Positions 30,693 through 44,740 are shown, numbered from the stretch's first letter. The stretch: 64,000 nt of DNA from IMGVR_UViG_3300027771_001853:186001-250000; one strand, 5' to 3'. Notes: a model not told the origin generated them from the sequence alone. A program made the numbers and translations.

Positions 30693-31682
30693 TTATTTTT
30701 CGTAATACTCTAACCAATATTCAATCATTTCATCTAACATTGTTTCAAATGTGTATTTGTGTTCCCAACCTAACATTTCTTTCGCTCTAGAACAATCACC
30801 TTTTAAGTGTTCTAGTTCTTCTGGTCTTAAAAACCTTTTATCTGTTTTAATATATTTTTCCCAATCTAGTTCTAGTGAGTTAAAAACATACTCAACCAAG
30901 TCTTGGACTGTGTGAGATACCCCTGTGGAACATACAAAGTCATCTGGTGTATCTTGTTGTAACATCAACCACATCGCTTCAACATAGTCTTTCGCGTGTC
31001 CCCAATCTCTACTAGCTTTCATATTACCCAATTTTAACTCATTGGTCAAACCTAATTTAATCTCTACAGCTATTTTAACCACTTTATTTGTTACAAAATT
31101 AGTTCCTCTTCTTGGTGATTCGTGATTGAACAGAATACCATTAGACACAAACATACCGTAAGAGTTTCTATAATTTTTACATATGTTATGTGCGTATACT
31201 TTAGCACAACCATATGGTGAAACTGGGTTTAACGGTGTTGTTTCTCTTTGGTACCCATCACTATCAATACTGTTACCAAACATTTCTGATGATGATGCTT
31301 GATATACCCTAGCCTTAGGACAAACTAATTTAATGGATTCTAGTAAATTTAATGTACCAGCACCTATACTTTCTAAAGTGTATTTTGGTTGGTCAAAACT
31401 TATCCTCACATGTGATTGAGCTGCTAGATTATACACCTCATCTGGTTTTGATTTACCCAATACTTTACATATTGAAGCCATGTCAGTCATGTCAGCATAT
31501 TCTAAATTTAATTTTTTATATATACTATCTGGTATCCTTGCAGTCTGATTCTCAGCTACAGAATTTCTTTTTAACATACCCCAAACTTCGTACCCTTTTT
31601 CTAATAACAACTCTGCTAGATATGAACCATCTTGTCCGTTAATCCCTGTTATTAAAGCTTTTTTCTTATTTGTATCCATCAT
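30693..31682 (-). CDS. gmd: GDP-mannose 4,6-dehydratase (copy A)
   Basis: ITGINGQDGSYL, AAQSHV, QASSSE, SPYGCAK, FNHESPRRG, RDWGHA. Confidence 0.95.
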   Translation of the reverse strand: MMDTNKKKALITGINGQDGSYLAELLLEKGYEVWGMLKRNSVAENQTARIPDSIYKKLNLEYADMTDMASICKVLGKSKPDEVYNLAAQSHVRISFDQPKYTLESIGAGTLNLLESIKLVCPKARVYQASSSEMFGNSIDSDGYQRETTPLNPVSPYGCAKVYAHNICKNYRNSYGMFVSNGILFNHESPRRGTNFVTNKVVKIAVEIKLGLTNELKLGNMKASRDWGHAKDYVEAMWLMLQQDTPDDFVCSTGVSHTVQDLVEYVFNSLELDWEKYIKTDKRFLRPEELEHLKGDCSRAKEMLGWEHKYTFETMLDEMIEYWLEYYEK

Positions 31683-32451
31683 ACTCAAATCTTTTTAAAT
31701 ATTTATCATATATATCCGGTCTTTTATTTATTATATAATCGTCAATCTGTTGACATGTATCGGGTAAAACATTCCCGTCTTTTCCTTGGTGTTCTTTTCT
31801 ATGCCCTGGCCCGGATTGGTACCTAAGTTTATCAGGGTCACCCCCTGTTGCTACACCTAGATGGATACCTACGTACCTATCTAACGATTTCTTTTTGTGG
31901 TCTTTAATATCCTCTACGAAATTATCTATATCTTCTTTATTAAACTTACCACCAAATTGTTTATACCATTCTACTATTTTCAATAATTCTTCTTTTGGGT
32001 TCATTATAAAATCTTCATAATAAACTAATATTTTTGGTCCAAGGTATAAATCATATAACTCTAACATTGCTAAGTAATCCGTATTTTCTTGGTCAGATAA
32101 AGGTAGTCCTTGTAAATCGTTTAATACCAAATTAATCGGTATTGGTTGGTCATCAATTCTACGATGTCTTACAATACATTCTTTATGGTTCCTAACAATT
32201 AAGAAATACCCTTCATTTTCACCAGGGAATGTACCCCAAAAATCAGTACCGTTACCATGTGTTTTATGTATAACAGCCTTTGGGTTGGATTGGGTTATGT
32301 TCGCTCCTCTTTCTTCAGAGTCGTCTGACCCTATAATCACTAAATCTGTTAATCTTTCTATACAATAACATAACCAGTTACTCCCAGAACGTGGATACGA
32401 TGCTATCGTAACTTTTCTATTATTTACTGAATCCTCATAAAATGTCCCCAT
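31666..32451 (-). CDS. Sulfotransferase (Sulfotransfer_1-like)
   Basis: ASYPRSGSNW 5'-PSB loop, KTH, IVRN, YEDF. Confidence 0.75.
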   Translation of the reverse strand: MGTFYEDSVNNRKVTIASYPRSGSNWLCYCIERLTDLVIIGSDDSEERGANITQSNPKAVIHKTHGNGTDFWGTFPGENEGYFLIVRNHKECIVRHRRIDDQPIPINLVLNDLQGLPLSDQENTDYLAMLELYDLYLGPKILVYYEDFIMNPKEELLKIVEWYKQFGGKFNKEDIDNFVEDIKDHKKKSLDRYVGIHLGVATGGDPDKLRYQSGPGHRKEHQGKDGNVLPDTCQQIDDYIINKRPDIYDKYLKRFEYDGYK

Positions 32452-33601
32452 AGTCGTTTATTATTTTACATATTTTATTTATTTCCTCCGTTTTTAAATC
32501 TTGGTGATTTGGTATATAGAACCCAAATTCGTGTAATAAGTCACAGTTTGGTAGTTTTGGCATCTCATAATGTTTTAACCAAAAAGGTTGCCTACCCATA
32601 GAACCAGCTATAAGTGGTCTAACTTCTATCCCTTCTTTGGTCATTACTTCCATAATCTTAGACCTATTCCTATTAACTATAGGATATGCAAAGCTGGATA
32701 TAAAATCAGATTTATCAACCCTTAAGTTAAGCATATTATTATTAATTTTTTTCTTATACAAATCAAAGTTACTTTTTCTAACCACACTAAAGTTATCTAA
32801 TTTATCTAATTGTCTTAACCCTAAAAAAGCCTGTAAGTCTGTAGCTCTAAGGTTAAACCCAGGGTAATAAAAAGTATAAGCTTTATTTTCAGGTGATACG
32901 TCCCATTCATCACTTAATTCTTTAGCGTCTTCTGTGGATAAATCTCTATCCCACCCATGACTTCTTAAAGCTAAAAGAATGTTATATATCTCTTTGTCAT
33001 CTGTGTTTATTAATCCACCCTCAATGGTAGATAAATGGTGTCCGTAATATAAAGAAAAACAAGACATAAGTCCTGCGGTACCTAAATAATCACCTTTAAA
33101 TTTAGACCCCATACTTTCACATGTGTCCTCCAAAAGTGTTACATCATACTTATCACACAGTTCTACTATTTTAGTCATATCAGGTACTAGACCTAACACT
33201 GTAACTAATAATAAACATGTCGGGGTTTCTTTTATGAATAACTCCTCTAAATGCCCTAAATCCACAGATAGGTCTTCCATATTAGAATCACATAGTATTG
33301 GTTGTAAACCTAACTGCATGACAGAAGAAACGTCTGTTACCCAAGATAGTGAAGGTACTATGATTTTATCGTTTTTTAACCTACCACTAGTTTTTAAAGC
33401 GTACAACATTAATAATATAGCTGAGGAACCAGAATTAACAAATACACTGTATTTGGTTCCTAACTTTTTTGCCCATTTTTTTTCAAACTTTACAGTTAAA
33501 GGCCCTTTAGTTAACCTAGGTACCTCATCACCACCTGTTAACCACTCAGCTAAAACAGCCATGTCTTTTTTACTTATAGTATCACCAACTAATTTAGTCA
33601 T
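32435..33601 (-). CDS. colD: DegT-family PLP enzyme, ColD-type GDP-4-keto-6-deoxymannose 3-dehydratase
   Basis: VNSGSSA, EDTCESMG, SLYYGHHLSTIEGG (His in place of Schiff-base Lys), RSHGW, GFNLR; likely start MTKLVGD. Confidence 0.7.
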   Translation of the reverse strand: MTKLVGDTISKKDMAVLAEWLTGGDEVPRLTKGPLTVKFEKKWAKKLGTKYSVFVNSGSSAILLMLYALKTSGRLKNDKIIVPSLSWVTDVSSVMQLGLQPILCDSNMEDLSVDLGHLEELFIKETPTCLLLVTVLGLVPDMTKIVELCDKYDVTLLEDTCESMGSKFKGDYLGTAGLMSCFSLYYGHHLSTIEGGLINTDDKEIYNILLALRSHGWDRDLSTEDAKELSDEWDVSPENKAYTFYYPGFNLRATDLQAFLGLRQLDKLDNFSVVRKSNFDLYKKKINNNMLNLRVDKSDFISSFAYPIVNRNRSKIMEVMTKEGIEVRPLIAGSMGRQPFWLKHYEMPKLPNCDLLHEFGFYIPNHQDLKTEEINKICKIINDYGDIL

Positions 33602-33603
33602 CT

Positions 33604-34728
33604 TTAATTGTTTTTTGTGGTTATAATACAAGGTGAGGTTTTTATCTTATCTAAAAACTTCATGTATATTATTTCAAATCTTTCATCTCTACAAATTAAA
33701 CTAAAAGGAACTAATGGTTCTCCGTGACCATAACTTACCATATCCCATAATTCATATTCTAATTCTACAGTTTTGGTTGTGGTTTTTTCACTACCATTTT
33801 TTAATTCTTTTACGAAGTTTTTAACCCATTTTTTCACATCTCCGTTTGGTTTCCAACCCAACTTATTTTTAATTTTACTTATGTCCGCTAAAGTTGCTTT
33901 TGGTTCTAACCTATCACCTATATATTCTACATGACTATTAGTGTGATGTTCAAATAAAACTGCTAACTCATTTATGGTGACGTTATCAGAGTTCCCAACA
34001 TTATAAACCCCACCATTAAGTTTGTCTGTATGTGTTGCCGATAATAGGTTAGCGTTTACAACATCACCTACATATGTAAAATCCCTTCTCTGTTCCCCAT
34101 CATTTGTTATTGTAATATTTTTACCTTCTTCTACTTGACCTGCCCATATACCCAAAACTGTACAGTATGCCCCTTCTCTTGTCATTCTATCACCATACAC
34201 ATTAAAGTACCTTAAACATACCGTATCTAACCCGTACACATCACTAAACAATTTACAATAGTCTTCACAAATCATCTTTTGTGCTGCATATGGTGACATT
34301 GGGTTTCTAGGTAATTCTTCTGATGTTGGCATTACTTCCGCGTCTCCGTATATTGATGACGAAGACGATAGTACAAATCTTTTTACTTTTGAGTCTGCAC
34401 AAGCTTTCAATAACTTTAGAGTAGCAGTAACATTGTTTTCGTTAAACATTACTGGGTCTTCAATCGAGGGTTGTACTCTTGCCATGGCGGCAAAATGGAA
34501 TACCGCGTCAACATCTTCTAGATATTCACTTATAGTTTCTACTTCGGCTGTAACTAAATCTTGTTCCCAAAAATACGCAGCTGAATTAATATTTTCTCTT
34601 TTACCTGTGGATAGATTATCTATTACGGTAACTTGTACCCCCATATCCACTAACCTATCTACCATATTTGAACCGATAAATCCAGCTCCTCCGGTAACTA
34701 CTGCTTTTTTAATTTTATTTTCTTGCAT
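33604..34728 (-). CDS. NAD-dependent NDP-sugar epimerase/dehydratase
   Basis: TGGAGFIGS, SSSSIYG, YAAQK, LRYFNVYG, RDFTYV. Confidence 0.9.
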   Translation of the reverse strand: MQENKIKKAVVTGGAGFIGSNMVDRLVDMGVQVTVIDNLSTGKRENINSAAYFWEQDLVTAEVETISEYLEDVDAVFHFAAMARVQPSIEDPVMFNENNVTATLKLLKACADSKVKRFVLSSSSSIYGDAEVMPTSEELPRNPMSPYAAQKMICEDYCKLFSDVYGLDTVCLRYFNVYGDRMTREGAYCTVLGIWAGQVEEGKNITITNDGEQRRDFTYVGDVVNANLLSATHTDKLNGGVYNVGNSDNVTINELAVLFEHHTNSHVEYIGDRLEPKATLADISKIKNKLGWKPNGDVKKWVKNFVKELKNGSEKTTTKTVELEYELWDMVSYGHGEPLVPFSLICRDERFEIIYMKFLDKIKTSPCIITTKNN

Positions 34729-35617
34729 AATTATAATTTTTTATAAACCATTCTACGGTTTTTTCTACACCTTCTCTTAATGGTGTGTATTTAAAATCTG
34801 GATTCAACTCGGTAAACTTGGTATTATCACTAGGTTTTCTGAATTGTCCATCTGTCTTATCTGTTTCCCATAAAATATCACCTTTAAAATCCATAACGTC
34901 AACTATTGTCTCAACAAGTTCTTTTATTGAGTATTCGGTAGATGTTGAGGTTATTAGTGGTTCTGGGGAATCGTAGTTATTTAAAGCCCACATAGATATG
35001 TCACCAGCATCTTGTGAGTATAGTAACTCTCTTTGGGGTTTTCCTGTCCCCCAAACTTTCAATGGTGTGTTATTTTTTTTCGCTAGGTAACATTTGTGTA
35101 CTAAAGATGGGACTACGTGACCCTCATCAATCTTAAAATTATCCCTAGGCCCATATATGTTACACGGTACTATAGAAACATAATTCACACCATACTGTTC
35201 TCTATATGTTCTAATCTGTACTTCAGCTAATCTTTTAGAATATGAATACCCTAAACTTGTTGGGTGTGGTTCTCCTGAATGTATCTGGTCGGAAGTTAAT
35301 GGATAGTTTGCGTTCACTGGGAAAATACATGTAGATAATAAACATACTAATTTTTTAACCCCAACTAACCTAGAAACCTCTAGTACATTAGTATTAATCA
35401 TAGTATTCTTATAAAGGAATTCACCTTTTAATTTAGAGTTGATTCCGACACCACCTATTTTTCCAGCACAATGAATCACAGCCTCCGGTGAGTGTTTCTT
35501 AAAAAACGCTAAAGTTTCATCAAAATTAGTTAAATCGCACTCTTTAGAAGCAAATGTGACATCCGCATCTATAGTAGAACCAACCATACCATTACCACCA
35601 GTTACTAATAGTTTCAT
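34715..35617 (-). CDS. fcl: GDP-L-fucose synthase / ColC-like epimerase-reductase
   Basis: TGGNGMVG, GGVG.N, STCIFP, YSYSK, NIYGP.DNF, HVVPSL, WGTGKP.RE. Confidence 0.9.
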   Translation of the reverse strand: MKLLVTGGNGMVGSTIDADVTFASKECDLTNFDETLAFFKKHSPEAVIHCAGKIGGVGINSKLKGEFLYKNTMINTNVLEVSRLVGVKKLVCLLSTCIFPVNANYPLTSDQIHSGEPHPTSLGYSYSKRLAEVQIRTYREQYGVNYVSIVPCNIYGPRDNFKIDEGHVVPSLVHKCYLAKKNNTPLKVWGTGKPQRELLYSQDAGDISMWALNNYDSPEPLITSTSTEYSIKELVETIVDVMDFKGDILWETDKTDGQFRKPSDNTKFTELNPDFKYTPLREGVEKTVEWFIKNYNYARK

Positions 35618-35619
35618 AA

Positions 35620-36597
35620 TTAATTGTTTTTAGAATAATACACCAACCAATAATCAACCATCTCTTCCATTAACATTTTAAATGTGTATTTAGGTTCCCA
35701 ACCCAACTCAGTTCTAATTTTAGTTGAGTCACCCTTTAAGTACGGTAGTTCCTCTGGTCTCATAAATTTAGGATTCTGTTCGATGTAGTCTTCATAATCT
35801 AAATCTAAATATTTAAACACTAGTTCACACATTTCTCTAACAGAGTGTGTCTCCATAGTTGATACTACCCAGTCTCCTGGTTCATCGTGTTGCATCATTA
35901 AATGCATCGCTCTTACATAATCCCAAGAATGTCCCCAGTCTCTAAAAGAGTCCATATTACCCAATTCTAAATTATCTTGTAAACCTAATTTTATTCTTGC
36001 GGCCGCTTTTACGACTTTATTAGTTACAAAATTACTACCCCTCCTAGGTGATTCATGATTAAATAGAATACCGTTAGTTGCGTGTAATTTATAAGCTCTC
36101 CTATAATTCCTAATCATATTATACCCAAAAACTTTTGAGCACCCATATGGGGAAACTGGGTTCATGACCGTTGTCTCTCTTTGGGATTTGTCTTCATCCA
36201 CAGTTAGTCCAAACATTTCTGAACTACTTGCTTGGTAGAATTTTGAATCTGGACAACTTCTTCTATATGCCTCCAACATATTAAGTACACCCATTGCATT
36301 TGTTTGTACTGTAAATTGTGGTATGTCAAAGCTAATTCTTACATGACTTTGAGCAGCTAAATTATATATCTCATCTGGTTGTATTTCATCCAGTAATCTT
36401 TCTATACCACCTTGGTCCAATAAGTCCCCATAGTACGTATGTATTTTATCTTCTAGGTGTACAATCCTTGTATCTTGGTTCTCGGCTGTAGAATTTCTTC
36501 TAACTATCCCATGTACTTCGTAACCTAATTCTAGTAGATACTCCGCTAAGTAACTACCGTCCTGTCCTGCTATTCCTGTTATAAATGCTTTTTTCAT
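35620..36597 (-). CDS. gmd: GDP-mannose 4,6-dehydratase (copy B)
   Basis: ITGIAGQDGSYL, AAQSHV, QASSSE, FNHESPRRG; likely start MKKAFIT at 36597. Confidence 0.95.
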   Translation of the reverse strand: MKKAFITGIAGQDGSYLAEYLLELGYEVHGIVRRNSTAENQDTRIVHLEDKIHTYYGDLLDQGGIERLLDEIQPDEIYNLAAQSHVRISFDIPQFTVQTNAMGVLNMLEAYRRSCPDSKFYQASSSEMFGLTVDEDKSQRETTVMNPVSPYGCSKVFGYNMIRNYRRAYKLHATNGILFNHESPRRGSNFVTNKVVKAAARIKLGLQDNLELGNMDSFRDWGHSWDYVRAMHLMMQHDEPGDWVVSTMETHSVREMCELVFKYLDLDYEDYIEQNPKFMRPEELPYLKGDSTKIRTELGWEPKYTFKMLMEEMVDYWLVYYSKNN

Positions 36598-37181
36598 TTG
36601 AATATCTCCATTTTTGTTAAATCTGGCCAGTCTTCGACTACCCATTGTTTTGGTTTAATTTTAATAGCCTCAGGTAACTTTTTCAAACCTAAGGCTGCTG
36701 TTTCTGGTGTCATGTAGTAATGGTACCCAATAGTGTCTATATTTTGTTTCGTCCATGGTACATCAGGAACCCTACCATCATAAGACATTTTTTTTAGTTT
36801 TAATGCCGCGTCTTTACTATCAGTTAATATCACACCACCCCTACCTAAACTTAAGTGTTTTTTAAATTGGAAGCTGACACACATAAACGTACCGGGAATA
36901 TAACTATCTTTTTCCCATAGTACCGCAGCGTCTATTATATTATGGTTTAAATAATAATAATTTACCCAATCGTCATTTCTCCATTTTAAATTTATCCCTA
37001 ATTTATTGGATAGGAATGGGATTGATAGATACGTTCTATGTGGTACATTAATGGTTTTTACTTTATCACGTCTTAGACAAAGTTCCACCCCATGAGTACA
37101 ACAGTCTACCGCTACCGCATACGGTGAACCAAAAAATTCCGCAATCTTATCTTCAAATGTTTTTATAACCTCAAAACTCAT
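36594..37181 (-). CDS. Short DegT/DnrJ-family PLP-dependent aminotransferase-like protein
   Basis: FE..IA.F.G..YAVAVD.CT, IDAA, SFQFKKHL..G.GG, GYHYYM; only ~195 aa. Confidence 0.7.
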   Translation of the reverse strand: MSFEVIKTFEDKIAEFFGSPYAVAVDCCTHGVELCLRRDKVKTINVPHRTYLSIPFLSNKLGINLKWRNDDWVNYYYLNHNIIDAAVLWEKDSYIPGTFMCVSFQFKKHLSLGRGGVILTDSKDAALKLKKMSYDGRVPDVPWTKQNIDTIGYHYYMTPETAALGLKKLPEAIKIKPKQWVVEDWPDLTKMEIFK

Positions 37182-37183
37182 AT

Positions 37184-37753
37184 CTATCTTTTTTTCATTA
37201 TGTGCCTCTTTTGACACTGAACATTTAAACTTATTGATGTTCCGTGTTCTTTATCCATATGTGGTAGGTAAGCTTGGGAGTGGTCATCAAAGTCAGAATG
37301 TTCGGTTTTTCTCCAATCATATCTAGCTATCCCATCAAAATCCAGTTTATCTAACACCCCTTTAAGACTTTTAAAATCGTACACCGTTTTATGGTATATT
37401 GTTTCTTCGTCCATTGTCATCTTACCGTATAAAGGACCTAGTATGTCTTTTAATTCTAAATTACCATTAGAATATAGTGCTGACATGTTAGTAAAGTCTG
37501 GTACAGCCAAACGTAAGTGACCTCCTTGTATTAAAACTCTTTTCCATTCAGTTAATAGTGCATTTATTTCATCCCTGTCAAAATACTCTATAACGTGAGA
37601 AGAATATATTAAGGAAACACTTTCATCCTCATAAGGTAAACTGAAAATATCTCTTGATTTTAAATGTGGGTAATCACCACCATCTATGTGGTCCCAACTT
37701 GGGCCAAAATTTCTCCAACCACAACCTAAATTTAATTTTATATCTGATTTCAT
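37184..37753 (-). CDS. Class I SAM-dependent methyltransferase
   Basis: KLNLGCG, LPYED.SV..IYSSHVIE, W.RVL..GG.LRLAVPD. Confidence 0.85.
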   Translation of the reverse strand: MKSDIKLNLGCGWRNFGPSWDHIDGGDYPHLKSRDIFSLPYEDESVSLIYSSHVIEYFDRDEINALLTEWKRVLIQGGHLRLAVPDFTNMSALYSNGNLELKDILGPLYGKMTMDEETIYHKTVYDFKSLKGVLDKLDFDGIARYDWRKTEHSDFDDHSQAYLPHMDKEHGTSISLNVQCQKRHIMKKR

Positions 37754-38192: not shown

Positions 38193-39056
38193 TTATCTTT
38201 GTGATAGTATAATAGCTAATTCAGCGAATGTACTTCTGTTATCGTATATCCCTATTGTTGTTTCCGCTAATAAGAACATGTCTTCCACAGCTTCTTGTGC
38301 GTGGTCTTTAGTTATGTAGAAATTGTTATGGTTTAACCATGAAACAGTTTCATCTTCTTTAATTATATAATTTTCTTTTTTCCTAAATAAAACGTTGTTA
38401 GGGTAAGAATTAACAATTGTTTTTTCCATTTCTGGGTCTTCAGTGGATATGAAAAACTTCTGGTTAGGGTTTTTTTCTAAATACGGTAACATATTTTTCA
38501 TATAAGCATCAACACTTGAGTCTAGAAAATCAGTACCTCTTGCGTGTATACCAATAACATCTTTAGATAGTCCTAAATCATTTTTAATCTTATCTATATT
38601 ATCTTGTATCGATTTTATGGGTTTTAGTGACCTAATAAAATCATGACTCTTTTCTAAATTTACACCTTCTAAAAAACTTATATTAAAGACTAGAATATTT
38701 TCTTGTTGGTCATCGTGAGTGTATGAATGTTTTCCATCAGCACCATACAAATCAGTAAGATTACGTAATGTATCGTTTTTAAACTCCCAATCTTCCCTAT
38801 CAGCATCATATTTGTTGATGCACATTTTATAATTTTTTAATTCTTTTAACTCTTCTAAACTTATTGTTTGTAATTCATTCTCAAAAAGTTCATCTAGTTT
38901 AGCTAGACAACCATTAGGGATTAGATTGTCCCAGTATATTTTTAATTCCCTATCAGTTTCTTGTGAAATAACATAACAAGATGCTACACATCTTAATCTG
39001 TTCCCTAAACCGCTAGTAACGTATGGTATTATTGTTTTCATATTATCTTGGGTCAT
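38193..39056 (-). CDS. NodZ/O-FucT-like fucosyltransferase (GT-B)
   Basis: SGLGNRL, IGIHARGTDF, FFISTED, A..DM..L, STF. Confidence 0.7.
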   Translation of the reverse strand: MTQDNMKTIIPYVTSGLGNRLRCVASCYVISQETDRELKIYWDNLIPNGCLAKLDELFENELQTISLEELKELKNYKMCINKYDADREDWEFKNDTLRNLTDLYGADGKHSYTHDDQQENILVFNISFLEGVNLEKSHDFIRSLKPIKSIQDNIDKIKNDLGLSKDVIGIHARGTDFLDSSVDAYMKNMLPYLEKNPNQKFFISTEDPEMEKTIVNSYPNNVLFRKKENYIIKEDETVSWLNHNNFYITKDHAQEAVEDMFLLAETTIGIYDNRSTFAELAIILSQR

Positions 39057-39687
39057 ATCCCCATTTTTTAATAAAGTATCTTGTATTATGACCTATTATA
39101 GCATCAGACCTATCACCGTCAGCGTAAATTTCTATTCCGTGGTCAGCTCTAGTAAGTTCCACATCCATTGTAACACTATAGTTATTCTCTTTAATCCTAT
39201 TACCTAAATCTTGGTCTTCATGACCATAATGACCATCAAACTCAGGGTCAAATAACCCTATTTTATCTATTACTGATTTTCTTATACCTAAATTAGCAGT
39301 ACTAAACCAAGAATTAGCACGGGCACCATCAGGGAATTGTACTATTCCCCTACATGCGTCAAAATCTTTTAATGTGTCTAAATGTGACTGTACAAAATCT
39401 CTATAATGTGGTATACAATCATCATCCAATAATATTATGTATGGTGACACACACATCGCTACGGATTCATTAAATCTACCAACCCTATGGTAACCAATAT
39501 CTTCGTTCCAAATATATTTTGTTATAACTTGGAAGTCTGATGGGTTTATTCTGTCCTTACCCCCATCATCATTTATTATCAAATTAAAGTCCATGTTGGT
39601 TTGTTGTGATAAATTGTTAACTATCTGTGTTAACCTATCTGGTCTATTATATGTGGTGATAATTATGTCTATGCTTTTTTCTTTCAT
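39043..39687 (-). CDS. Glycosyltransferase family 2
   Basis: IIITTYNR, NDDG, LLDDD, IGLFD..F.G.YG.ED. Confidence 0.85.
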   Translation of the reverse strand: MKEKSIDIIITTYNRPDRLTQIVNNLSQQTNMDFNLIINDDGGKDRINPSDFQVITKYIWNEDIGYHRVGRFNESVAMCVSPYIILLDDDCIPHYRDFVQSHLDTLKDFDACRGIVQFPDGARANSWFSTANLGIRKSVIDKIGLFDPEFDGHYGHEDQDLGNRIKENNYSVTMDVELTRADHGIEIYADGDRSDAIIGHNTRYFIKKWGYDPR

Positions 39688-39691
39688 ATTT

Positions 39692-39722
39692 AAAATGTAT
39701 TAAAATATTTTAATAAAGTCAC
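39692..39722 (-). promoter_or_regulatory. Putative Bacteroidota-type -33/-7 promoter (weak)
   Basis: GTG-N20-TACATTTT upstream of the 39687 start. Confidence 0.35.
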
Positions 39723-41059
39723 TAAAACCCTATTTTTTCTCCTTCCTTAAATGGGTAGTTGTTATGACTTAGGTAGTCGTGTAAAACAGATTTATAATAT
39801 CTGTTTTTTAATTCTGGTTTTAACCATAAAAATTCTTGTACCACATCCACATCTAAAAATGGGTATCTTGTTTCTATTCCATAGGCTCCAGCCACATATT
39901 CTTCTTTTGCCAAATATGACTCCATACTACTATTAAAAAAACTAGGCCATGGAAAAATACTTGTCAGGTCTTGTGGGTAAAGACCACCAAAGTTACTGTG
40001 ATTGTATTTTTTAACCCCATTAAAACCATAATCTGAAAATAATTCATCTGCTCCCATCCCTGACAACAGAATTTTTTTACCATCACCAATAGCGTAATTA
40101 CATAATAACGATAATGAGTTTGCTCCATTATCATCTATTAATGATAGGTAATATTCGTTATAGTCACTGGAGTTTGAGTATGTAACATACTTAAATTCTT
40201 CTGTGTTTTTTTGGATGTAGTTGTGAGCGTCATTCAATTCTTTAGGGTGTCTGAATAATTCTTGAAATTCTGTATTTTCTTTTAGTTTTAATTTTCTTTG
40301 TTCTATAATGCCCCTATCTTCAGTACCCATTACCGTATAAGATTTAAATGGTACATCTTGTTTTATTAATTCACAAGCGATAGCACCACTATCGTAACCA
40401 CTACTAAGACCAATAAAAATCCTTTCTCTAAGATTGTATGTTCTTTTCTCTATAGATTTTTTAAATGCTTTTCTCCAGTCTTTAAAATCATCTTTATGTT
40501 GATTTAAATCAAATTCTTTAACCTTAAAAGTTTTTATCTCCATCATTAAATCTAAATCAAAAACTTTTGCTGTGTTTGGTTCCATCTTTTGCACATTCTG
40601 GTGACCTAGTCCAGCCAAACCACTACTGTACGACGCACAACCCAAATTACCTAAACCACTAGAATAAAAAATTGGTTTGGTTTTAAATGTGTCTGTGGAG
40701 AATAGGACTTTTCTTTGTTTTAGGTCAACTAATACTATAGCGAACTCACCATCTAATTTTTTAACAAAATCGAACGAGTGTTCTCTATATAATGAAATTA
40801 GGCATTCACCATCAGATTTATAATCACCAAAATCTTTATAGTTGTATATCTCCCCATTATATAGACAAATAACATCATCATCTACGAATGGTTGGGTGGT
40901 AAACTCTCCGGTTATACTTAATAGATTATGTAAAAACATAAGACCCGATAACTTTACAGCATTAGTCTTATCTGGTCCTCTAAATTGTGGGTAAAAATTA
41001 GCTCTACCCAACTGTTCTGGACTTAATTCTTTTTTTGCACTAAATATAAAACTACACAT
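39722..41059 (-). CDS. Asparagine synthetase-like glutamine amidotransferase (glycan amidation type)
   Basis: N-terminal Cys, RGPD, NGEIYN, SSGYDS, SGMGADELF, ETRYPFLD. Confidence 0.85.
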   Translation of the reverse strand: MCSFIFSAKKELSPEQLGRANFYPQFRGPDKTNAVKLSGLMFLHNLLSITGEFTTQPFVDDDVICLYNGEIYNYKDFGDYKSDGECLISLYREHSFDFVKKLDGEFAIVLVDLKQRKVLFSTDTFKTKPIFYSSGLGNLGCASYSSGLAGLGHQNVQKMEPNTAKVFDLDLMMEIKTFKVKEFDLNQHKDDFKDWRKAFKKSIEKRTYNLRERIFIGLSSGYDSGAIACELIKQDVPFKSYTVMGTEDRGIIEQRKLKLKENTEFQELFRHPKELNDAHNYIQKNTEEFKYVTYSNSSDYNEYYLSLIDDNGANSLSLLCNYAIGDGKKILLSGMGADELFSDYGFNGVKKYNHSNFGGLYPQDLTSIFPWPSFFNSSMESYLAKEEYVAGAYGIETRYPFLDVDVVQEFLWLKPELKNRYYKSVLHDYLSHNNYPFKEGEKIGF

Positions 41060-41062
41060 ATC

Positions 41063-41734
41063 TTAAAATTTATAATTTAATAATTCTATCTCCTTCTTAT
41101 AGACATTATATGTTATTTCTCTTGTACGTGGTGTATGTACATCCCTATAATCCACTTTCTTACTTTGGTTTAATGTTGGTAATTCAACATTAGGTAATCC
41201 TACTTTATCTGAAAACTTTTTAAAGTCTTCATTTAGATTTTCATACCTTAATACGTGGTCTACCATTATTTTACCGTCTTCATCTATCAAATAATCGTAT
41301 TGGTTATCGTACCCCCTATTCTGTGTAGCCCAAAATTCTGGACCAGTTTTACCCATATAACCCCTAGTGTAAAATATCTCCATCCACGCCTCAAAACTTC
41401 CAGCACTTTTTACGTGATTATACAGTGGGTGTTGAGGTTTTCCGTCCACTTCAGTACCGTCAGCTAATTCCCATTTTTCAGTACTGTTATTAACATCAAA
41501 CCAGAAACTTTTTTCTGCTATACAATAGTAGTAATTGGATACCATTCTATCCCATGGATTTCTGACCACACAAAAAGAACTACCATCACCCCAAAGTTCA
41601 GGGTTTTCATTTCTCATTTGTTGTGATGTTTGGTGTCCACCCGCTTGTTCCATTTTAAAAGTTTCTTGGATGCTTGTACCAGCATTCTTAGGAATGTGTA
41701 CAAATATTAAATTATTTTCTCTAGATATTGGCAT
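41063..41734 (-). CDS. Sulfotransferase family 2
   Basis: FVHIPKNAGTSI, VRNPWDRMVS.Y, RYENL..DF. Confidence 0.9.
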   Translation of the reverse strand: MPISRENNLIFVHIPKNAGTSIQETFKMEQAGGHQTSQQMRNENPELWGDGSSFCVVRNPWDRMVSNYYYCIAEKSFWFDVNNSTEKWELADGTEVDGKPQHPLYNHVKSAGSFEAWMEIFYTRGYMGKTGPEFWATQNRGYDNQYDYLIDEDGKIMVDHVLRYENLNEDFKKFSDKVGLPNVELPTLNQSKKVDYRDVHTPRTREITYNVYKKEIELLNYKF

Positions 41735-41735
41735 A

Positions 41736-42425
41736 TTAAAATCCTTTATAGTATAGTTGTGGAATTATAGGGTTCTGCCTTAAACCATTGTTAGCAAATC
41801 CTGGTAGTACTTTTACGTCGATATTTAAAGAATTTAAAACAAAGGGTAAACTTATCTGGTCTCTAGAAGAGAACCTACATATAATTTCCCACCATTTTAA
41901 ATTCATGACCTGTATTTGTGGTGTGTTTTTTCTTATACTAGCTGACAACTCAAATAACCCAAAATCTTTAGGAAACCCTTCCTCATTATAGAAGTCCAAC
42001 TGCCTATGAATATTATCTAAACTATCATAGTCACCACCAGGTCCCTCAGTAAGTTCTATTAATGTTTTTGCCTCATCGTAAAGACAGTCTCTTTCTGGGT
42101 GTTTAAATAGTGCTATATCATTATCTTTTAAATAAGTCTCACAAAATTCTTTAGGGTCTGATATAATATCATGTGTGGGGTCCATCCATATATGATAATC
42201 ATAATCTGGTAAAAAAACATGAGGCATTATCTTATATATTTTTGCGTTTCTTCTACCAGTAAATTGTTTATCTATAGTAAAATCAGGTGAAATTATTTGA
42301 TTCCACACTTCACATGGGTGCTCTTTATCTACATAGGCATAATAATCTACACCATGCCATTTTGTTTGTGGTGTTCGTAATTGTTGTACGTTACCAAATA
42401 CGGACGTTATAACTGCTATCTTCAT
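41736..42425 (-). CDS. DUF616 (TOD1/MUCI70) glycosyltransferase-like protein
   Basis: K..PH.FLPDYD..IWMD, HP.R.CLY.EA, WW, RDQISLP. Confidence 0.8.
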   Translation of the reverse strand: MKIAVITSVFGNVQQLRTPQTKWHGVDYYAYVDKEHPCEVWNQIISPDFTIDKQFTGRRNAKIYKIMPHVFLPDYDYHIWMDPTHDIISDPKEFCETYLKDNDIALFKHPERDCLYDEAKTLIELTEGPGGDYDSLDNIHRQLDFYNEEGFPKDFGLFELSASIRKNTPQIQVMNLKWWEIICRFSSRDQISLPFVLNSLNIDVKVLPGFANNGLRQNPIIPQLYYKGF

Positions 42426-43119
42426 TAGGGTGTTTTTTTAATACGTAATTTAATTCATTTATTTTTATTTCCTGTGTAACAATACTGTTTGATACTTGGT
42501 TCCCCCAACCTCTATTTACAACAGTATATTCATTGACTATACCTGGTTCACCAAATACGTCATGTAATTGTTTATAATACTCCACGTCCATTAACCATAT
42601 TAGATTTTCATCAAAATAAGGTTTTTCTTTAAGATTTCTAATAGATATAACACTAGGTGAACTCATAGTATTTTCACCGTATTGAATATTCTTATGGAAC
42701 CTTGGATGGAATGGGCTATGTAGGTTATGGACATCGTCACTTGAATGCTTACAAGCTGACGCTAACCATTTTACCGTTTCGTCTTCAAAACCCTTAACGG
42801 TTTTTTCTATACTAGTTTCATCAATAATAAAATCGTCTTGGAATAGGATTTTTATTATATCTCCAGAAGCGTTCTTCATAGCTACATTACTATTAGCAGA
42901 AGAATTACCTCTATTTTCTAAGTTTTTAACATACTTTATGTCTAATCTTCCGGCCCAATTAACACACAAATCTTTTATGTCGTCATTTTGACTATGGTCA
43001 GATATGACAACCTCTATATCCTTATGTGTTTGCTTTTCAAATAGATTAAAGTTGTATTCTAAAAACTCAACACCTCGTCCATTAGCTTCATATGATGGTA
43101 TACAAATTGATACTTTCAT
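42391..43119 (-). CDS. Glycosyltransferase family 2
   Basis: VSICIPSY, VISD, LFQDD. Confidence 0.85.
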   Translation of the reverse strand: MKVSICIPSYEANGRGVEFLEYNFNLFEKQTHKDIEVVISDHSQNDDIKDLCVNWAGRLDIKYVKNLENRGNSSANSNVAMKNASGDIIKILFQDDFIIDETSIEKTVKGFEDETVKWLASACKHSSDDVHNLHSPFHPRFHKNIQYGENTMSSPSVISIRNLKEKPYFDENLIWLMDVEYYKQLHDVFGEPGIVNEYTVVNRGWGNQVSNSIVTQEIKINELNYVLKKHPNEDSSYNVRIW

Positions 43120-43973
43120 TATAATATTTCTTCCACTTCACCCCTAACTCTTTCCCAAAAATCAGAGTACTTAAAATGTCTTTCATAGTTATCTTCTATT
43201 GCTTCCTTCATAGAATCGTAAGTTTCTGGAGTTAGTTTATTAATTATTTCATATAATTCTGGCCAACTACTAAAAGGTATTATCCCATCAATATTAAAGT
43301 ACTCACCAATATTAGGTGCTCCACAATATAAAGGTATTGTCTTTGACGCGATACAATCCACCAACTTTTCTGTGAACCAATTATCTGTATCACAATTTTC
43401 TACTATAATAGAGAACTGGTACCCATCAAAAATAGGGTCTTTTTTAGGTAGGTAACTCGTAGGTGGGAATAAACGATACTTTAACCCATTAGGTGTTAAT
43501 GTGTCTGGTAGTGATTGTTGGTTCGCTAAATTATTTAACTGTGGTAAAACCTCATATCTAAGTTTATGTCCTGGGAATATCTCCATTCTTTTAGCTCCGG
43601 GTAAAAAAGATAAAGCAAACTCCTTTTTAAATTCATACCCAGAATCCACCCAACACGTACCGAATGGAAATGGTTTAGTGTGTGGTATTTGTTCTAGTAA
43701 AATCGGGTCCCAAGTTAGTATAATATCAAATAGGTCTTGATTTTGTAATAACAAATCATTGGTTGCACTAGTAGGACTCAACCTCCTATATGCTTCTGGT
43801 TCTGTTTGTATATGTATCCTTATATCAGCATCTTTAAAATCCTGATTATTCAAATCCATATGGTCCCAATATATACAAACTTTTTTATTGTATTTAGGGA
43901 AATTTTGGGATGGTTCGTCGCTGCCTCCAATCCCAAATACTCTTGCTTGATGTAAATTTATATTTTCTTCCAT
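43119..43973 (-). CDS. GT10 alpha-1,3/4-fucosyltransferase-like
   Basis: YQFSIIVEN...WFTEKL.DC...TIPLY.G motif. Confidence 0.8.
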   Translation of the reverse strand: MEENINLHQARVFGIGGSDEPSQNFPKYNKKVCIYWDHMDLNNQDFKDADIRIHIQTEPEAYRRLSPTSATNDLLLQNQDLFDIILTWDPILLEQIPHTKPFPFGTCWVDSGYEFKKEFALSFLPGAKRMEIFPGHKLRYEVLPQLNNLANQQSLPDTLTPNGLKYRLFPPTSYLPKKDPIFDGYQFSIIVENCDTDNWFTEKLVDCIASKTIPLYCGAPNIGEYFNIDGIIPFSSWPELYEIINKLTPETYDSMKEAIEDNYERHFKYSDFWERVRGEVEEIL

Positions 43974-44740
43974 GTTTCCGGTACTAAATCTTTAGGGTCT
44001 GGTCCTTGTGGGCCAAACCAGTTATTTGGTGAAACAATAATTTTATCTTTATTGGTATTCAACCACGCTGCCCACCAACTAAAACTACTATTTGCTGTAA
44101 TTTGATGGTTACATATGGACATTAAATGTAAGTCTTCATAATTTTCATTATCACTAACAAAATTAACTTTTTTAATCCCATTTATCTTAGCTAAACTAAA
44201 TAAGTTATTCACACACCACAGAATATCATCAGAAAATACAAATATTTCAATATCTGTTTTTTTTGTTTCATTAACGATATATTCTATCGCTTCTTTATAG
44301 TAGTCCTGATTTGGGGTTGGGTGTATGTTTGGATAATTTAGGTAGTCACCTCTTCTTACATGTAAAGATATTGTATATTCTGAACGAATTATATTAATTT
44401 GGTCTTGTATACCCCTCTTAACATCCTCTGTCACAGTTATAATTTCTTGTACTTTATCTTTAGCGTGTTTAAAGTATTTTTCACTCTGGAAATACCCATT
44501 TATATTCATATCCTTAGTGTATGGTATAGGTGTGTAATGGAAAGGACCTTCACCCTCCTCAACCACAAAACTAATATCTTTTTTTAACCATTCTTTAGGT
44601 ATGTTAAAAAATGGAGCAAACCTATAATCTTCTGGTAATACAACCACATCATTATTTGCCTCAGCAATCCCAATAGCTGTAGCAAGATTAAATAATGAGT
44701 TACCTAACTTAAAATTCTTTATTCCTGTACTTGTTACCAT
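43958..44740 (-). CDS. GT11 alpha-1,2-fucosyl/colitosyltransferase
   Basis: LGN..F, GYFQSEKYF, HVRRGDY, FSDD, ANSSFSWWAAWL. Confidence 0.9.
   Translation of the reverse strand: MVTSTGIKNFKLGNSLFNLATAIGIAEANNDVVVLPEDYRFAPFFNIPKEWLKKDISFVVEEGEGPFHYTPIPYTKDMNINGYFQSEKYFKHAKDKVQEIITVTEDVKRGIQDQINIIRSEYTISLHVRRGDYLNYPNIHPTPNQDYYKEAIEYIVNETKKTDIEIFVFSDDILWCVNNLFSLAKINGIKKVNFVSDNENYEDLHLMSICNHQITANSSFSWWAAWLNTNKDKIIVSPNNWFGPQGPDPKDLVPETWKKI

What the first reader, a model, noticed from the sequence alone, without database searches (positions are those of the whole stretch)
30693..36597. Apparent complete GDP-colitose (and/or GDP-fucose) pathway in a phage
Seen: gmd x2, an Fcl/ColC-like reductase and a DegT enzyme with GHH (His) at the position of the usual catalytic Lys. 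Established: Gmd, ColD and ColC convert GDP-mannose to GDP-colitose, and GT11 enzymes can transfer colitose. Inference: the phage makes a rare 3,6-dideoxyhexose for its glycan.
Basis: partly seen in the sequence, partly recalled or inferred. Interest (0 to 1): 0.6.

Follow-up and report, generated by a model that had tools for sequence, protein, structure and literature searches.

The report
Phage GDP-fucose and GDP-colitose sugar genes
A large marine T4-like phage carries enzymes that most likely turn the host's GDP-mannose into GDP-fucose and the rare 3,6-dideoxy sugar GDP-colitose, and this gene set, so far labelled only as "aminotransferase/epimerase", is widespread in aquatic phages.

Summary
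On the minus strand, 30693-36597 holds two intact GDP-mannose 4,6-dehydratases (57% identical), a DegT-fold enzyme with His in place of the catalytic Lys, one Fcl/ColC-family reductase, a GalE-like epimerase and a sulfotransferase-like gene. The window is part of a 297.6 kb T4-like marine phage.

The DegT enzyme's best solved match, by sequence and by fold, is E. coli ColD. It falls in a His-only clade, lacks a four-Cys Fe-S motif, and the genome has no E3-type reductase.

In 80 related viral contigs, a reductase-ColD-Gmd cassette with GT11 and GT10-like transferases recurs beside PhoH.

One caveat: the window's only reductase is not an orthologue of E. coli ColC or of the phage clade that usually sits next to ColD. 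It belongs to a GDP-fucose-synthase-type clade. That clade forms compact triads with ColD in some relatives and ColD-less Gmd-Fcl pairs in others.

Most likely both GDP-L-fucose and GDP-L-colitose are made from host GDP-mannose. This is inferred, not shown.

I rate it a new, phage-borne member of a known pathway, of moderate interest.

The parts
30693..31688 (-). Gmd-A, a GDP-mannose 4,6-dehydratase of the short phage type (about 330 aa). It is the copy next to PhoH, as in most relatives.
   Evidence: PF16363 396 bits over the full length. TIGR01472 402.7 bits, just under the 415 cut-off. 69% identical to the single Gmd of L006. Ser133/Glu135/Tyr159/Lys163 align with the E. coli Gmd catalytic residues. 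It sits in the main phage Gmd subclade.
31666..32451 (-). Sulfotransferase-like protein (261 aa), inserted between ColD and Gmd-A only in this phage lineage.
   Evidence: Weak Pfam Sulfotransfer_1 match (E 2.4e-4). In the ESM Atlas feature search, 23 of 30 hits are sulfotransferase clusters; best score 0.97 with 198 shared features. Present in L010 and L015 only.
32435..33601 (-). ColD-like sugar 3-dehydratase (388 aa from the ATG at 33601; the ORF listing starts it at a TTG at 33631). It is PMP/PLP-dependent and has His188 in place of the catalytic Lys.
   Evidence: Best solved sequence is E. coli ColD 2gms at 207 bits, against E1 at 134 and PerA at 112. 34% identical to E. coli O111 ColD. 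The AF2 model's top folds are ColD, TM 0.78-0.83. It lies in a His-only clade, 60 of 60 rows. His is present in 79 of 80 viral relatives.
33604..34728 (-). GalE/WbgU/WbpP-like SDR (374 aa), probably a UDP-hexose or UDP-HexNAc 4-epimerase. It occupies the slot where relatives carry the ColC-like reductase.
   Evidence: Best solved matches are 6dnt (223 bits), then the 4-epimerases 4zrm, WbgU and WbpP. TIGR01179 galE 182 bits. Homologues of 53-58% identity coexist with a separate GMER reductase in L017, L023 and L025.
34715..35617 (-). Fcl300, a GDP-L-fucose synthase-type 3,5-epimerase/4-reductase. It is the only GMER-family gene in the genome and the presumed catalyst of both the fucose and the colitose final step.
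   Evidence: 297 bits to human GDP-L-fucose synthase, 154 bits to E. coli Fcl. 29% identical to E. coli O111 ColC and 34% to the phage ColC-like protein of L006. Ser95/Cys97/Tyr124/Lys128/His167 are conserved. It is the only real NF047922 match in the genome. Clade placement.
35620..36597 (-). Gmd-B, a second GDP-mannose 4,6-dehydratase (325 aa from the ATG at 36597).
   Evidence: PF16363 394 bits, TIGR01472 383.6 bits. 57% identical to Gmd-A. 75% identical to the Gmd of L145, which sits in a Gmd-ColD-Fcl triad. It falls in a separate 6-row phage subclade. Catalytic residues are conserved.
36594..37217 (-). Mini-DegT (195-207 aa), a conserved truncated DegT-fold protein that keeps the Lys. Function unknown; its membership of the pathway is not shown.
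   Evidence: PF01041 matches only at profile positions 11-70 and 163-236. Homologues of 195-236 aa occur in L010, L015, L018, L067, L069, L094 and L145. The Lys aligns with the catalytic position.
37184..37753 (-). SAM-dependent methyltransferase of the glycan island.
   Evidence: PF08241 35.6 bits.
38193..39056 (-). NodZ/FUT8-like protein (GT23-like alpha-1,6-fucosyltransferase family; weak match).
   Evidence: PF05830 23.3 bits and PF19745 22.5 bits, both below their cut-offs. Homologues lie in L017, L023, L025 and L073 beside the ColD cassette.
39043..43119 (-). Five island genes: GT2 (39043-39687), AsnB-like amidotransferase (39722-41059), Sulfotransfer_2 (41063-41734), TOD1/MUCI70-like GT (41736-42425) and GT2 (42391-43119).
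   Evidence: Pfam matches.
43119..43973 (-). GT10-like (fucosyltransferase C-terminal domain) protein.
   Evidence: PF00852 19.1 bits, below the cut-off. The L006 orthologue carries an unmarked Glyco_transf_10 hit. Present in 37 of 69 related loci.
43958..44740 (-). GT11 glycosyltransferase, the candidate alpha-1,2-fucosyl/colitosyl transferase.
   Evidence: PF01531 102 bits against a cut-off of 23.9. Present in 41 of 69 related loci.
44742..47729 (-). Three further glycosyltransferases (44742-45560, 45557-46432, 46383-47729) that close the island next to dUTPase.
   Evidence: Pfam Glyco_transf_7C, Glyco_tranf_2_2 and Glyco_tranf_2_5. phrog_1579 and phrog_2456 for 45557-46432.

Best explanation
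The stretch is the nucleotide-sugar module of a 17 kb glycan island (30.7-47.7 kb) in a marine T4-like jumbo phage.

Proposed pathway:
1. The host supplies GDP-mannose; the phage has no ManC.
2. Gmd-A and Gmd-B oxidise and dehydrate it to GDP-4-keto-6-deoxy-D-mannose.
3. Part of this intermediate is taken by the Fcl-type reductase (3,5-epimerisation, then NADPH reduction at C-4) to give GDP-L-fucose.
4. Part is taken by the ColD-like PMP enzyme. His188 acts as the acid/base that expels the 3-OH, giving GDP-4-keto-3,6-dideoxy-D-mannose. PMP is regenerated from glutamate.
5. The same Fcl-type reductase epimerises C-5 and reduces C-4 of that product, giving GDP-L-colitose, which is 3-deoxy-L-fucose.
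6. The GT11, GT10-like and NodZ-like transferases of the island add these sugars to a glycan, which is further methylated and sulfated.

Shown here: gene content, intact catalytic residues, the ColD-type identity of the DegT enzyme, and conservation of the cassette in related phages. Inferred: the activity of each enzyme, dual use of the reductase, and the acceptor.
For: - **ColD identity.** Best solved sequence and fold are E. coli ColD. His aligns with ColD His188. All 60 His-bearing sequences form one side of a branch against 29 Lys-bearing DegT aminotransferases, SH-aLRT 100. The best tree joins the phage clade to E. coli and Pleomorphomonas ColD.
- **Not E1-type.** Only two Cys are invariant in the phage family, so there is no four-Cys motif. 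The genome has no Fer2 or NAD_binding_1 reductase. These are the features that separate ColD from E1/SpnQ (PMC8987622).
- **Substrate supply.** Two Gmds have intact catalytic residues.
- **Cassette conservation.** Among 80 IMG/VR loci, 79 have the His. A GMER-family gene lies immediately upstream in 47 of 74 loci, a Gmd immediately downstream in 45 of 75, and the full triad is present in 44 of 69.
- **Fcl300-type reductases partner ColD.** They are the only reductase beside ColD and one Gmd in L145, L091 and L092. The same clade also occurs in a ColD-less GT11-Gmd-Fcl-PhoH cassette, L146.
- **Transferases.** GT11 at 102 bits plus GT10-like and NodZ-like genes.
- **The sequence is real.** It occurs in marine metagenomes of at least 13 studies.
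Against: - No enzyme of this phage family has been assayed.
- The window lacks the phage-specific ColC-like reductase that sits next to ColD in 43 of 47 clade members. Fcl300 is only 29% identical to characterised E. coli ColC.
- I found no published evidence that an Fcl accepts the 3-deoxy substrate.
- ColD's Ser187 is Gly here.
- The grouping with authentic ColD has weak support, SH-aLRT 74. A bacterial RfbH-like clade is equally distant, at 33-36% identity.
- Both Gmds score just under NCBIfam's equivalog cut-off.
Confidence: 0.6

Rival explanations
1. Only GDP-L-fucose, or another 6-deoxyhexose, is made. The ColD-like protein is inactive in this phage, or its product is a dead end because the dedicated ColC-like reductase was lost when the Gmd-B/Fcl pair and the GalE-like SDR came in.
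For: The ColC-like clade that normally abuts ColD is absent from the whole genome. Fcl300's clade includes a ColD-less, fucose-only cassette, L146. Fcl300 sits directly beside Gmd-B, like a classic gmd-fcl pair.
Against: The ColD-like gene is intact. It is 89% identical to two independent relatives with the same layout and keeps every residue that is invariant across the family. Fcl300-type reductases are the only partner of ColD in L145, L091 and L092.
Confidence: 0.17
2. The 3-dehydratase works, but the end product is a different 3,6-dideoxy or 3,4,6-trideoxy sugar. Two routes are conceivable: C-4 reduction without C-5 epimerisation by the GalE-like SDR that occupies the ColC slot, or 4-amination to GDP-3-deoxyperosamine with help from the Lys-bearing mini-DegT.
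For: SDR374 lies immediately upstream of ColD, exactly where relatives have the reductase. The mini-DegT keeps the Lys and is conserved in several phages. PDB entry 3dr7 shows a perosamine synthase with bound GDP-3-deoxyperosamine. A truncated DegT partnering a full-length one is known in Serratia (PMC11726168).
Against: SDR374's closest solved relatives are UDP-hexose and UDP-HexNAc 4-epimerases. Its homologues coexist with a separate GMER reductase in L017, L023 and L025. The mini-DegT lacks about 45 core residues and the whole C-terminal domain.
Confidence: 0.12
3. The His-type DegT enzyme is an E1/RfbH-like dehydrase acting on a CDP- or dTDP-linked 4-keto-6-deoxyhexose supplied by the host, unrelated to the neighbouring Gmd genes.
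For: The best NCBIfam model is RfbH at 198 bits, and JGI names its relatives CDP-6-deoxy-D-xylo-4-hexulose-3-dehydrase. A bacterial RfbH-like clade is as close in identity as ColD.
Against: E. coli ColD itself hits the RfbH model, at 261 bits and below the cut-off. The four-Cys motif and an E3-type reductase are absent. Classical E1 scores far lower than ColD by sequence and ranks 27th by fold. The gene is tightly linked to Gmd in most relatives. At 388 aa it has ColD's length, against 420-437 aa for the RfbH-like proteins.
Confidence: 0.06
4. The enzyme is an ordinary sugar aminotransferase, as PHROGs and RefSeq annotate its relatives.
For: phrog_3139 is named 'aminotransferase'. RefSeq names the cyanophage ACG-2014f homologue 'aminotransferase'.
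Against: The Schiff-base Lys is replaced by His in 79 of 80 relatives. The His clade is cleanly separated from the Lys-bearing paralogues found in the same phage loci.
Confidence: 0.03

Closest known systems
E. coli O55/O111 (also Yersinia pseudotuberculosis, Vibrio cholerae O139) GDP-L-colitose pathway: Gmd, ColD (WbdK), ColC (WbdJ)
   Same: Same three-step logic from GDP-mannose. The dehydratase has the same length (388 aa) and His at position 188, lacks an Fe-S motif, and has ColD as its best sequence and fold match. The reductase belongs to the GMER family with the same Ser/Cys/Tyr/Lys/His set. A GT11 transferase lies nearby.
   Different: Only 34% identity to ColD, and Gly instead of Ser187. 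The reductase is not a ColC orthologue (29% identity); it is of the GDP-fucose-synthase type. There are two Gmds. The cluster has no manB/manC, wzx/wzy or GDP-sugar hydrolase genes (E. coli locus L011). It is carried by a virus.
Phage ColC-like/ColD-like/Gmd cassette of related aquatic T4-like phages (e.g. L006, and 44 of 69 IMG/VR loci)
   Same: Orthologous ColD (about 60% identity) and Gmd-A (about 70%). Same position between the GT11/GT10 genes and PhoH.
   Different: The window and its two close relatives have lost the phage ColC-like reductase. They have gained a GalE-like SDR, a sulfotransferase-like gene, a second Gmd and an Fcl-type reductase. Only 2 of 69 loci have two Gmds.
Cyanophage sugar islands: Synechococcus phage ACG-2014f gp209-gp211, and the gmd genes of P-SSM2, S-SRM01 and S-SCSM1
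   Same: ACG-2014f has a Gmd, an Fcl-like reductase and a His-type (G-H-H) DegT protein in a row, followed by GTs, methyltransferases and a sulfotransferase. Its DegT protein is sister to the window's clade.
   Different: Only 36% identity. The Gmd and reductase are of the proteobacterial/cyanobacterial type. The genes are annotated only as 'nucleotide-sugar epimerase', 'aminotransferase' or 'hypothetical protein'.
Chlorovirus PBCV-1 GMD/GMER (virus-encoded GDP-fucose/GDP-rhamnose synthesis) and the giant-virus sugar pathways
   Same: A virus encodes its own GDP-mannose-derived 6-deoxyhexose pathway plus glycosyltransferases that work without host lipid-carrier machinery (my own knowledge; reviewed in PMC9614988).
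   Different: Those are eukaryotic viruses. That review mentions no 3-dehydratase and no colitose.
E1 (RfbH/DdhC/AscC) with E3, the CDP-3,6-dideoxyhexose pathway
   Same: A His-for-Lys PMP-dependent 3-dehydrase of the same fold.
   Different: E1 needs a [2Fe-2S] cluster (four Cys) and the E3 reductase, acts on CDP-sugars and is about 437 aa long. None of these features is found here.

Membership tests
ColD (GDP-4-keto-6-deoxy-D-mannose 3-dehydratase) | His replaces the Schiff-base Lys of DegT-type aminotransferases | tested here: met
   The first His of G-H-H aligns with ColD His188. His is present in 79 of 80 viral relatives. The His clade is separated from the Lys clade with SH-aLRT 100.
ColD (GDP-4-keto-6-deoxy-D-mannose 3-dehydratase) | No [2Fe-2S] four-Cys motif and no E3-type reductase partner (this separates ColD from E1/SpnQ; PMC8987622) | tested here: met
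   Only Cys104 and Cys149 are invariant in the phage family. There is no Cys in the region after the His. The 297.6 kb genome has no Fer2 or NAD_binding_1 match.
ColD (GDP-4-keto-6-deoxy-D-mannose 3-dehydratase) | Closest characterised relative by sequence and fold is ColD | tested here: met
   phmmer: 207 bits to 2gms, against 134 to E1 and 112 to PerA. Foldseek: ranks 1-4 are ColD at TM 0.78-0.83, and E1 is rank 27.
ColD (GDP-4-keto-6-deoxy-D-mannose 3-dehydratase) | Ser187 before His188 (the S187N/H188K pair converts ColD into an aminotransferase, PDB 3gr9) | tested here: not met
   Gly occupies this position in 76 of 80 phage sequences. E. coli ColD, Pleomorphomonas ColD and the RfbH-like clade all have Ser. 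It is not Asn, the aminotransferase residue.
ColD (GDP-4-keto-6-deoxy-D-mannose 3-dehydratase) | Phylogenetic grouping with characterised ColD | tested here: inconclusive
   The best tree joins the phage clade to E. coli/Pleomorphomonas ColD, but with SH-aLRT 74. The AU test of the alternative did not finish.
ColD (GDP-4-keto-6-deoxy-D-mannose 3-dehydratase) | Gene linkage to the enzyme that makes its substrate (Gmd) | tested here: met
   Two Gmds lie within 3 kb in the window. A Gmd lies immediately downstream in 45 of 75 related loci.
ColD (GDP-4-keto-6-deoxy-D-mannose 3-dehydratase) | C-3 deoxygenation of GDP-4-keto-6-deoxymannose with glutamate-dependent PMP regeneration | not testable with these tools
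   Needs an enzyme assay.
ColC (GDP-L-colitose synthase) | GMER-family SDR with the Ser/Tyr/Lys triad plus the Cys/His epimerisation pair | tested here: met
   Ser95, Cys97, Tyr124, Lys128 and His167 of Fcl300 align with E. coli Fcl S107/C109/Y136/K140/H179 and with the same residues of E. coli ColC.
ColC (GDP-L-colitose synthase) | Orthology with characterised ColC (E. coli WbdJ) | tested here: not met
   29% identity. In the tree, E. coli ColC groups with proteobacterial Fcl, while Fcl300 groups with Fcl-type proteins of phage and Bacteroidota-labelled contigs.
ColC (GDP-L-colitose synthase) | Functional coupling to ColD (adjacent, sole reductase) | tested here: inconclusive
   It is the only GMER gene in the genome but is separated from ColD by the SDR gene. 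Members of the same clade are adjacent to ColD in L145 and L091 and close to it in L092.
Fcl (GDP-L-fucose synthase, NF047922) | Score over the curated equivalog cut-off | tested here: not met
   220.7 bits against a cut-off of 500. The cut-off is strict: only 3 of 14 control genomes pass it. The best solved match is nonetheless human GDP-L-fucose synthase at 297 bits.
Gmd (GDP-mannose 4,6-dehydratase, TIGR01472) | Score over the curated cut-off and conserved catalytic Thr/Ser-Glu-Tyr-Lys | tested here: inconclusive
   402.7 and 383.6 bits against a cut-off of 415. The Pfam PF16363 match covers the full length at 396 and 394 bits. All four catalytic positions are conserved, with Ser for Thr133.
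GT11 (alpha-1,2-fucosyl/colitosyl transferases) | Pfam PF01531 over the gathering score | tested here: met
   102.2 bits against 23.9 for 43958-44740. Donor specificity is not testable here.

The most novel reading that the evidence does not exclude
A large, globally distributed group of aquatic T4-like phages encodes its own deep-branching ColD lineage (G-H-H motif) with co-evolving reductases. On this reading they make a 3,6-dideoxyhexose, a sugar class known so far only from bacterial surface glycans. They would use it in a fucose/colitose-containing, methylated and sulfated glycan assembled without any lipid-carrier machinery, possibly directly on virion proteins. In the window's lineage, a single Fcl-type enzyme would serve as both fucose and colitose synthase.
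Probability: 0.35. Interest if true: 0.65.

Novelty: new member of a known kind. Interest (0 to 1): 0.5.

Why it matters
- 3,6-Dideoxyhexoses such as colitose are regarded as bacterial O-antigen specialities. If phages make GDP-colitose, viral sugar metabolism extends beyond the 6-deoxy and amino sugars known from giant viruses.
- It would correct a systematic mis-annotation. The family is labelled "aminotransferase" in PHROGs and RefSeq and "CDP-...-3-dehydrase" in JGI, and it has thousands of metagenomic members.
- The family offers a natural experiment on whether GDP-fucose synthases can double as colitose synthases. Three reductase clades sit next to one dehydratase clade.
- The enzymes are compact and could be useful for chemoenzymatic synthesis of GDP-colitose.
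- What the phage glycan decorates, virion or host surface, is an open and testable question.

Tried and rejected
- **Assembly chimera or bacterial contamination: rejected.** T4-type capsid, portal, protease and terminase genes flank the island. Independent contigs agree with the window.
- **In-situ tandem duplication of gmd: rejected.** The copies are 57% identical and sit in different phage subclades.
- **Fcl300 acquired from a Bacteroidota host: not supported.** The "Flavobacteriales MAG" protein P0233 lies on a phage-like contig syntenic with the window. The six "genome" hits above 55% identity are MAG or SAG contigs with the phage cassette.
- **Classical E1 Fe-S motif:** looked for and not found.
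- **Papers with ColD active-site detail:** PMC2533848 is not held, so roles of residues other than His188 and Ser187 are not claimed.
- **Literature searches:** phage-encoded colitose, viral 3-dehydratases and Fcl activity on the 3-deoxy substrate returned nothing relevant. One search failed on a comma.
- **AU test of 'phage clade + RfbH-like clade':** never finished in three runs.
- **Joints in read laying between about 31.0 kb and 36.0 kb:** these are cross-matches of other organisms' gmd genes at 90% likeness, not rearrangements.
- **RNA evidence:** no RNA run holds the stretch, so expression is untested.
- **Not run:** the big representative-protein search and complex prediction. No claim here rests on absence of relatives or on binding.

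Full report
**Setting**

The window is bases 186001-250000 of a 297,623-base IMG/VR virus record estimated 93% complete. It carries T4-type genes: major capsid protein (50753-52591), prohead protease (54204-54929), portal (56216-58066) and large terminase (58359-60092). Its capsid protein is only 36-42% identical to cultured phages, the nearest being Flavobacterium phage immuto and Microcystis phage Mel-JY01. G+C is about 30-41%, and about 32-35% across the stretch. The stretch occurs nearly unchanged in marine, sediment and sponge metagenomes of at least 13 studies. The host is unknown.

**Observation**

All genes lie on the minus strand, packed end to end. Reading in the direction of transcription:

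| Coordinates | Gene | Size |
|---|---|---|
| 36594-37217 | mini-DegT | 195-207 aa |
| 35620-36597 | Gmd-B | 325 aa |
| 34715-35617 | Fcl-type reductase (Fcl300) | 300 aa |
| 33604-34728 | GalE-like SDR (SDR374) | 374 aa |
| 32435-33601 | ColD-like | 388 aa |
| 31666-32451 | sulfotransferase-like | 261 aa |
| 30693-31688 | Gmd-A | 331 aa |
| 29919-30668 | PhoH | 249 aa |

Pfam, NCBIfam and PDB matches are unambiguous for the two Gmds, the reductase and the DegT enzyme. Its first His aligns with His188 of E. coli ColD, the residue mutated in PDB entries 3b8x, 2r0t and 3gr9. The same gene order is found in three independent assemblies (L014, L015, L010). An 18 kb contig of another run covers 31275-36645 with no difference.

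**The dehydratase**

The 388-aa protein is 34% identical to E. coli O111 ColD, which I fetched from its O-antigen cluster (L011).

- By phmmer it scores 207 bits to ColD, 134 to Yersinia E1 and 112 to perosamine synthase.
- An AlphaFold model (pLDDT 79) finds ColD entries at ranks 1-4 (TM 0.78-0.83). Perosamine synthase comes next and E1 is at rank 27.
- In a tree of 89 DegT-fold proteins, all 60 His-bearing sequences form one side of a branch (SH-aLRT 100). The other side holds 29 Lys-bearing aminotransferases, including paralogues from the same phage loci.
- Inside the His group there are three lineages: authentic ColD (E. coli, Pleomorphomonas), a bacterial RfbH-like group of 420-437 aa, and a phage clade that includes cyanophage ACG-2014f gp211.
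- The best tree joins the phage clade to ColD, but only with support 74. The test of the alternative did not finish.
- According to the review PMC8987622, ColD differs from E1/SpnQ by lacking the four-Cys [2Fe-2S] motif and the reductase partner. The phage family has only two invariant Cys, and the genome has no ferredoxin-type or FNR-type domain.
- One difference from ColD: Ser187 is Gly in 76 of 80 phage sequences.

**Comparative genomics**

The protein has thousands of metagenomic relatives at about 60% identity and at least 367 in IMG/VR. In 80 fetched viral loci:

- 79 have the His.
- A GMER-family reductase lies immediately upstream in 47 of 74.
- A Gmd lies immediately downstream in 45 of 75.
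- The triad is complete in 44 of 69.
- GT11 is present in 41 of 69, a GT10-like gene in 37 of 69 and PhoH in 28 of 69.

The simplest form (L006) reads dUTPase, GTs, GT11, GT10, GT2, two methyltransferases, reductase, ColD, Gmd, PhoH. A three-enzyme set that starts with Gmd and contains a His-type 3-dehydratase and one epimerase/reductase is the colitose recipe.

**The reductase problem**

In the GMER tree, a phage-specific clade of 47 sequences holds the usual partner; 43 of them directly abut ColD. The window's Fcl300 is not in that clade. It is 34% identical to the L006 protein and 29% to E. coli ColC.

Fcl300 lies in a clade of Fcl-type proteins at 57-68% identity. Some carry Bacteroidota MAG labels, but at least one of those (P0233) is in fact on a phage-like contig reading GT11-Gmd-Fcl-PhoH with no ColD (L146).

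Members of the same clade are the only reductase beside ColD and one Gmd in L091 and L092. The same holds in L145, which reads mini-DegT, Gmd (75% to Gmd-B), ColD-like (58%), Fcl (66% to Fcl300).

Fcl300 is the only GMER gene in the whole genome, and its catalytic Ser/Cys/Tyr/Lys/His are intact. Colitose is 3-deoxy-L-fucose. An Fcl acting on the 3-deoxy intermediate needs only its normal C-5 epimerisation and C-4 reduction; this is established chemistry plus inference. I therefore think Fcl300 serves both branches. This is the weakest link in the argument.

**Two Gmds**

Both belong to a phage-specific Gmd clade. Gmd-A sits in the main subclade. Gmd-B sits in a small subclade with the L145 Gmd. 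Only the window's lineage has two copies (2 of 69 loci). The layout looks like a merger, by recombination between related phages, of an L145-like module with the common ColD-Gmd-PhoH module. The ColC-like gene was lost in the process, and the SDR and sulfotransferase-like genes were gained.

**Other genes**

- SDR374's nearest solved relatives are UDP-hexose and UDP-HexNAc 4-epimerases. Its homologues coexist with a separate reductase elsewhere, so it probably supplies another sugar.
- The 261-aa protein is sulfotransferase-like.
- The island up to 47729 adds eight or more glycosyltransferases, a second sulfotransferase, a methyltransferase and an AsnB-like amidotransferase.
- The genome has no ManC-type nucleotidyltransferase, no initiating phosphoglycosyl transferase of the Bac_transf type and no Wzx-type flippase.
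- GDP-mannose must therefore come from the host. The acceptor may be a protein or a host structure; this remains open.

**Novelty**

The searchable literature gave no report of a virus-encoded colitose or 3-dehydratase pathway. Relatives are annotated as 'aminotransferase' (PHROGs, RefSeq), 'hypothetical protein' or 'CDP-6-deoxy-D-xylo-4-hexulose-3-dehydrase'. The chemistry is known from bacteria, so I file this as a new, phage-borne member of a known pathway. It has an unusual hybrid layout and a non-canonical reductase.

**Verdict**

| Claim | Confidence |
|---|---|
| Observation is correct | confirmed |
| A 3-dehydratase of the ColD type is encoded | about 0.85 |
| GDP-colitose is actually made in this phage, alongside GDP-fucose | about 0.6 |
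| Interest | 0.5 |

Noticed in passing
window 36594-37217 (-); also L010:6437-7024, L018:6943-7578, L067:11257-11916, L069:923-1612, L094:4736-5362, L145:3179-3889: A conserved mini-DegT of 195-236 aa. It keeps the N-terminal part and the Lys-bearing strand of a sugar aminotransferase but lacks about 45 core residues and the whole C-terminal domain. It is not a one-off pseudogene, because it recurs at 33-93% identity in divergent phages, usually just upstream of a Gmd. A truncated DegT that pairs with a full-length one is described for Serratia Ser4/Ser5 (PMC11726168); whether this protein pairs with the ColD-like enzyme is untested.
   Followed up: partly
window 1576-15114 (-), with the adjoining open frame 2-1540 (-): A single 4512-aa open reading frame whose only Pfam match is a weak Lcl_C hit (residues 3237-3340, 24 bits, below the cut-off). 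It may be a giant structural or fibre protein of the phage, and a conceivable glycan acceptor.
   Followed up: no
L146 and L147 (protein P0233), L094-L099: Proteins and contigs labelled as Flavobacteriales, Saprospiraceae, Pyrinomonadaceae, Blastocatellia, Marinimicrobia (a single-cell genome) or Arcobacter carry the phage cassette, and L146 is syntenic with the window downstream of PhoH. They look like phage contigs binned into MAGs or captured in infected cells. The taxon labels are weak host hints at best.
   Followed up: partly
L013:6044-9161 (Synechococcus phage ACG-2014f_Syn7803US26, NC_047714.1): A published cyanophage genome has Gmd (gp209), an Fcl-like reductase (gp210, NF047922 420 bits) and a His-type G-H-H DegT protein (gp211) in a row, followed by GTs, methyltransferases and a 'galactose-3-O-sulfotransferase'. 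The annotations are generic ('nucleotide-sugar epimerase', 'aminotransferase'). It is probably the same pathway.
   Followed up: partly
window 31666-32451, 41063-41734, 37184-37753, 39722-41059 (all -): The glycan island holds two sulfotransferase-like genes, a methyltransferase and an AsnB-like glutamine amidotransferase. This suggests a sulfated, methylated and possibly amidated glycan.
   Followed up: no
L100-L125, L134 (Prochlorococcus, and Rickettsiales- and Alphaproteobacteria-labelled marine genomes): A bacterial clade of 420-437-aa His-type (S-H-H) DegT proteins lies next to a 4,6-dehydratase only about 31% identical to Gmd. They score 278-361 bits on the RfbH model, below its cut-off. 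They show no Cys in the stretch after the His where I recall the classical E1 motif to lie. They may be a third kind of 3-dehydratase.
   Followed up: partly
window 26380-27078 (-): A 232-aa protein downstream of PhoH has a weak sigma-70 region 2 match (E 6e-4, below the cut-off). It may be a phage late sigma factor, gp55-like in role.
   Followed up: no
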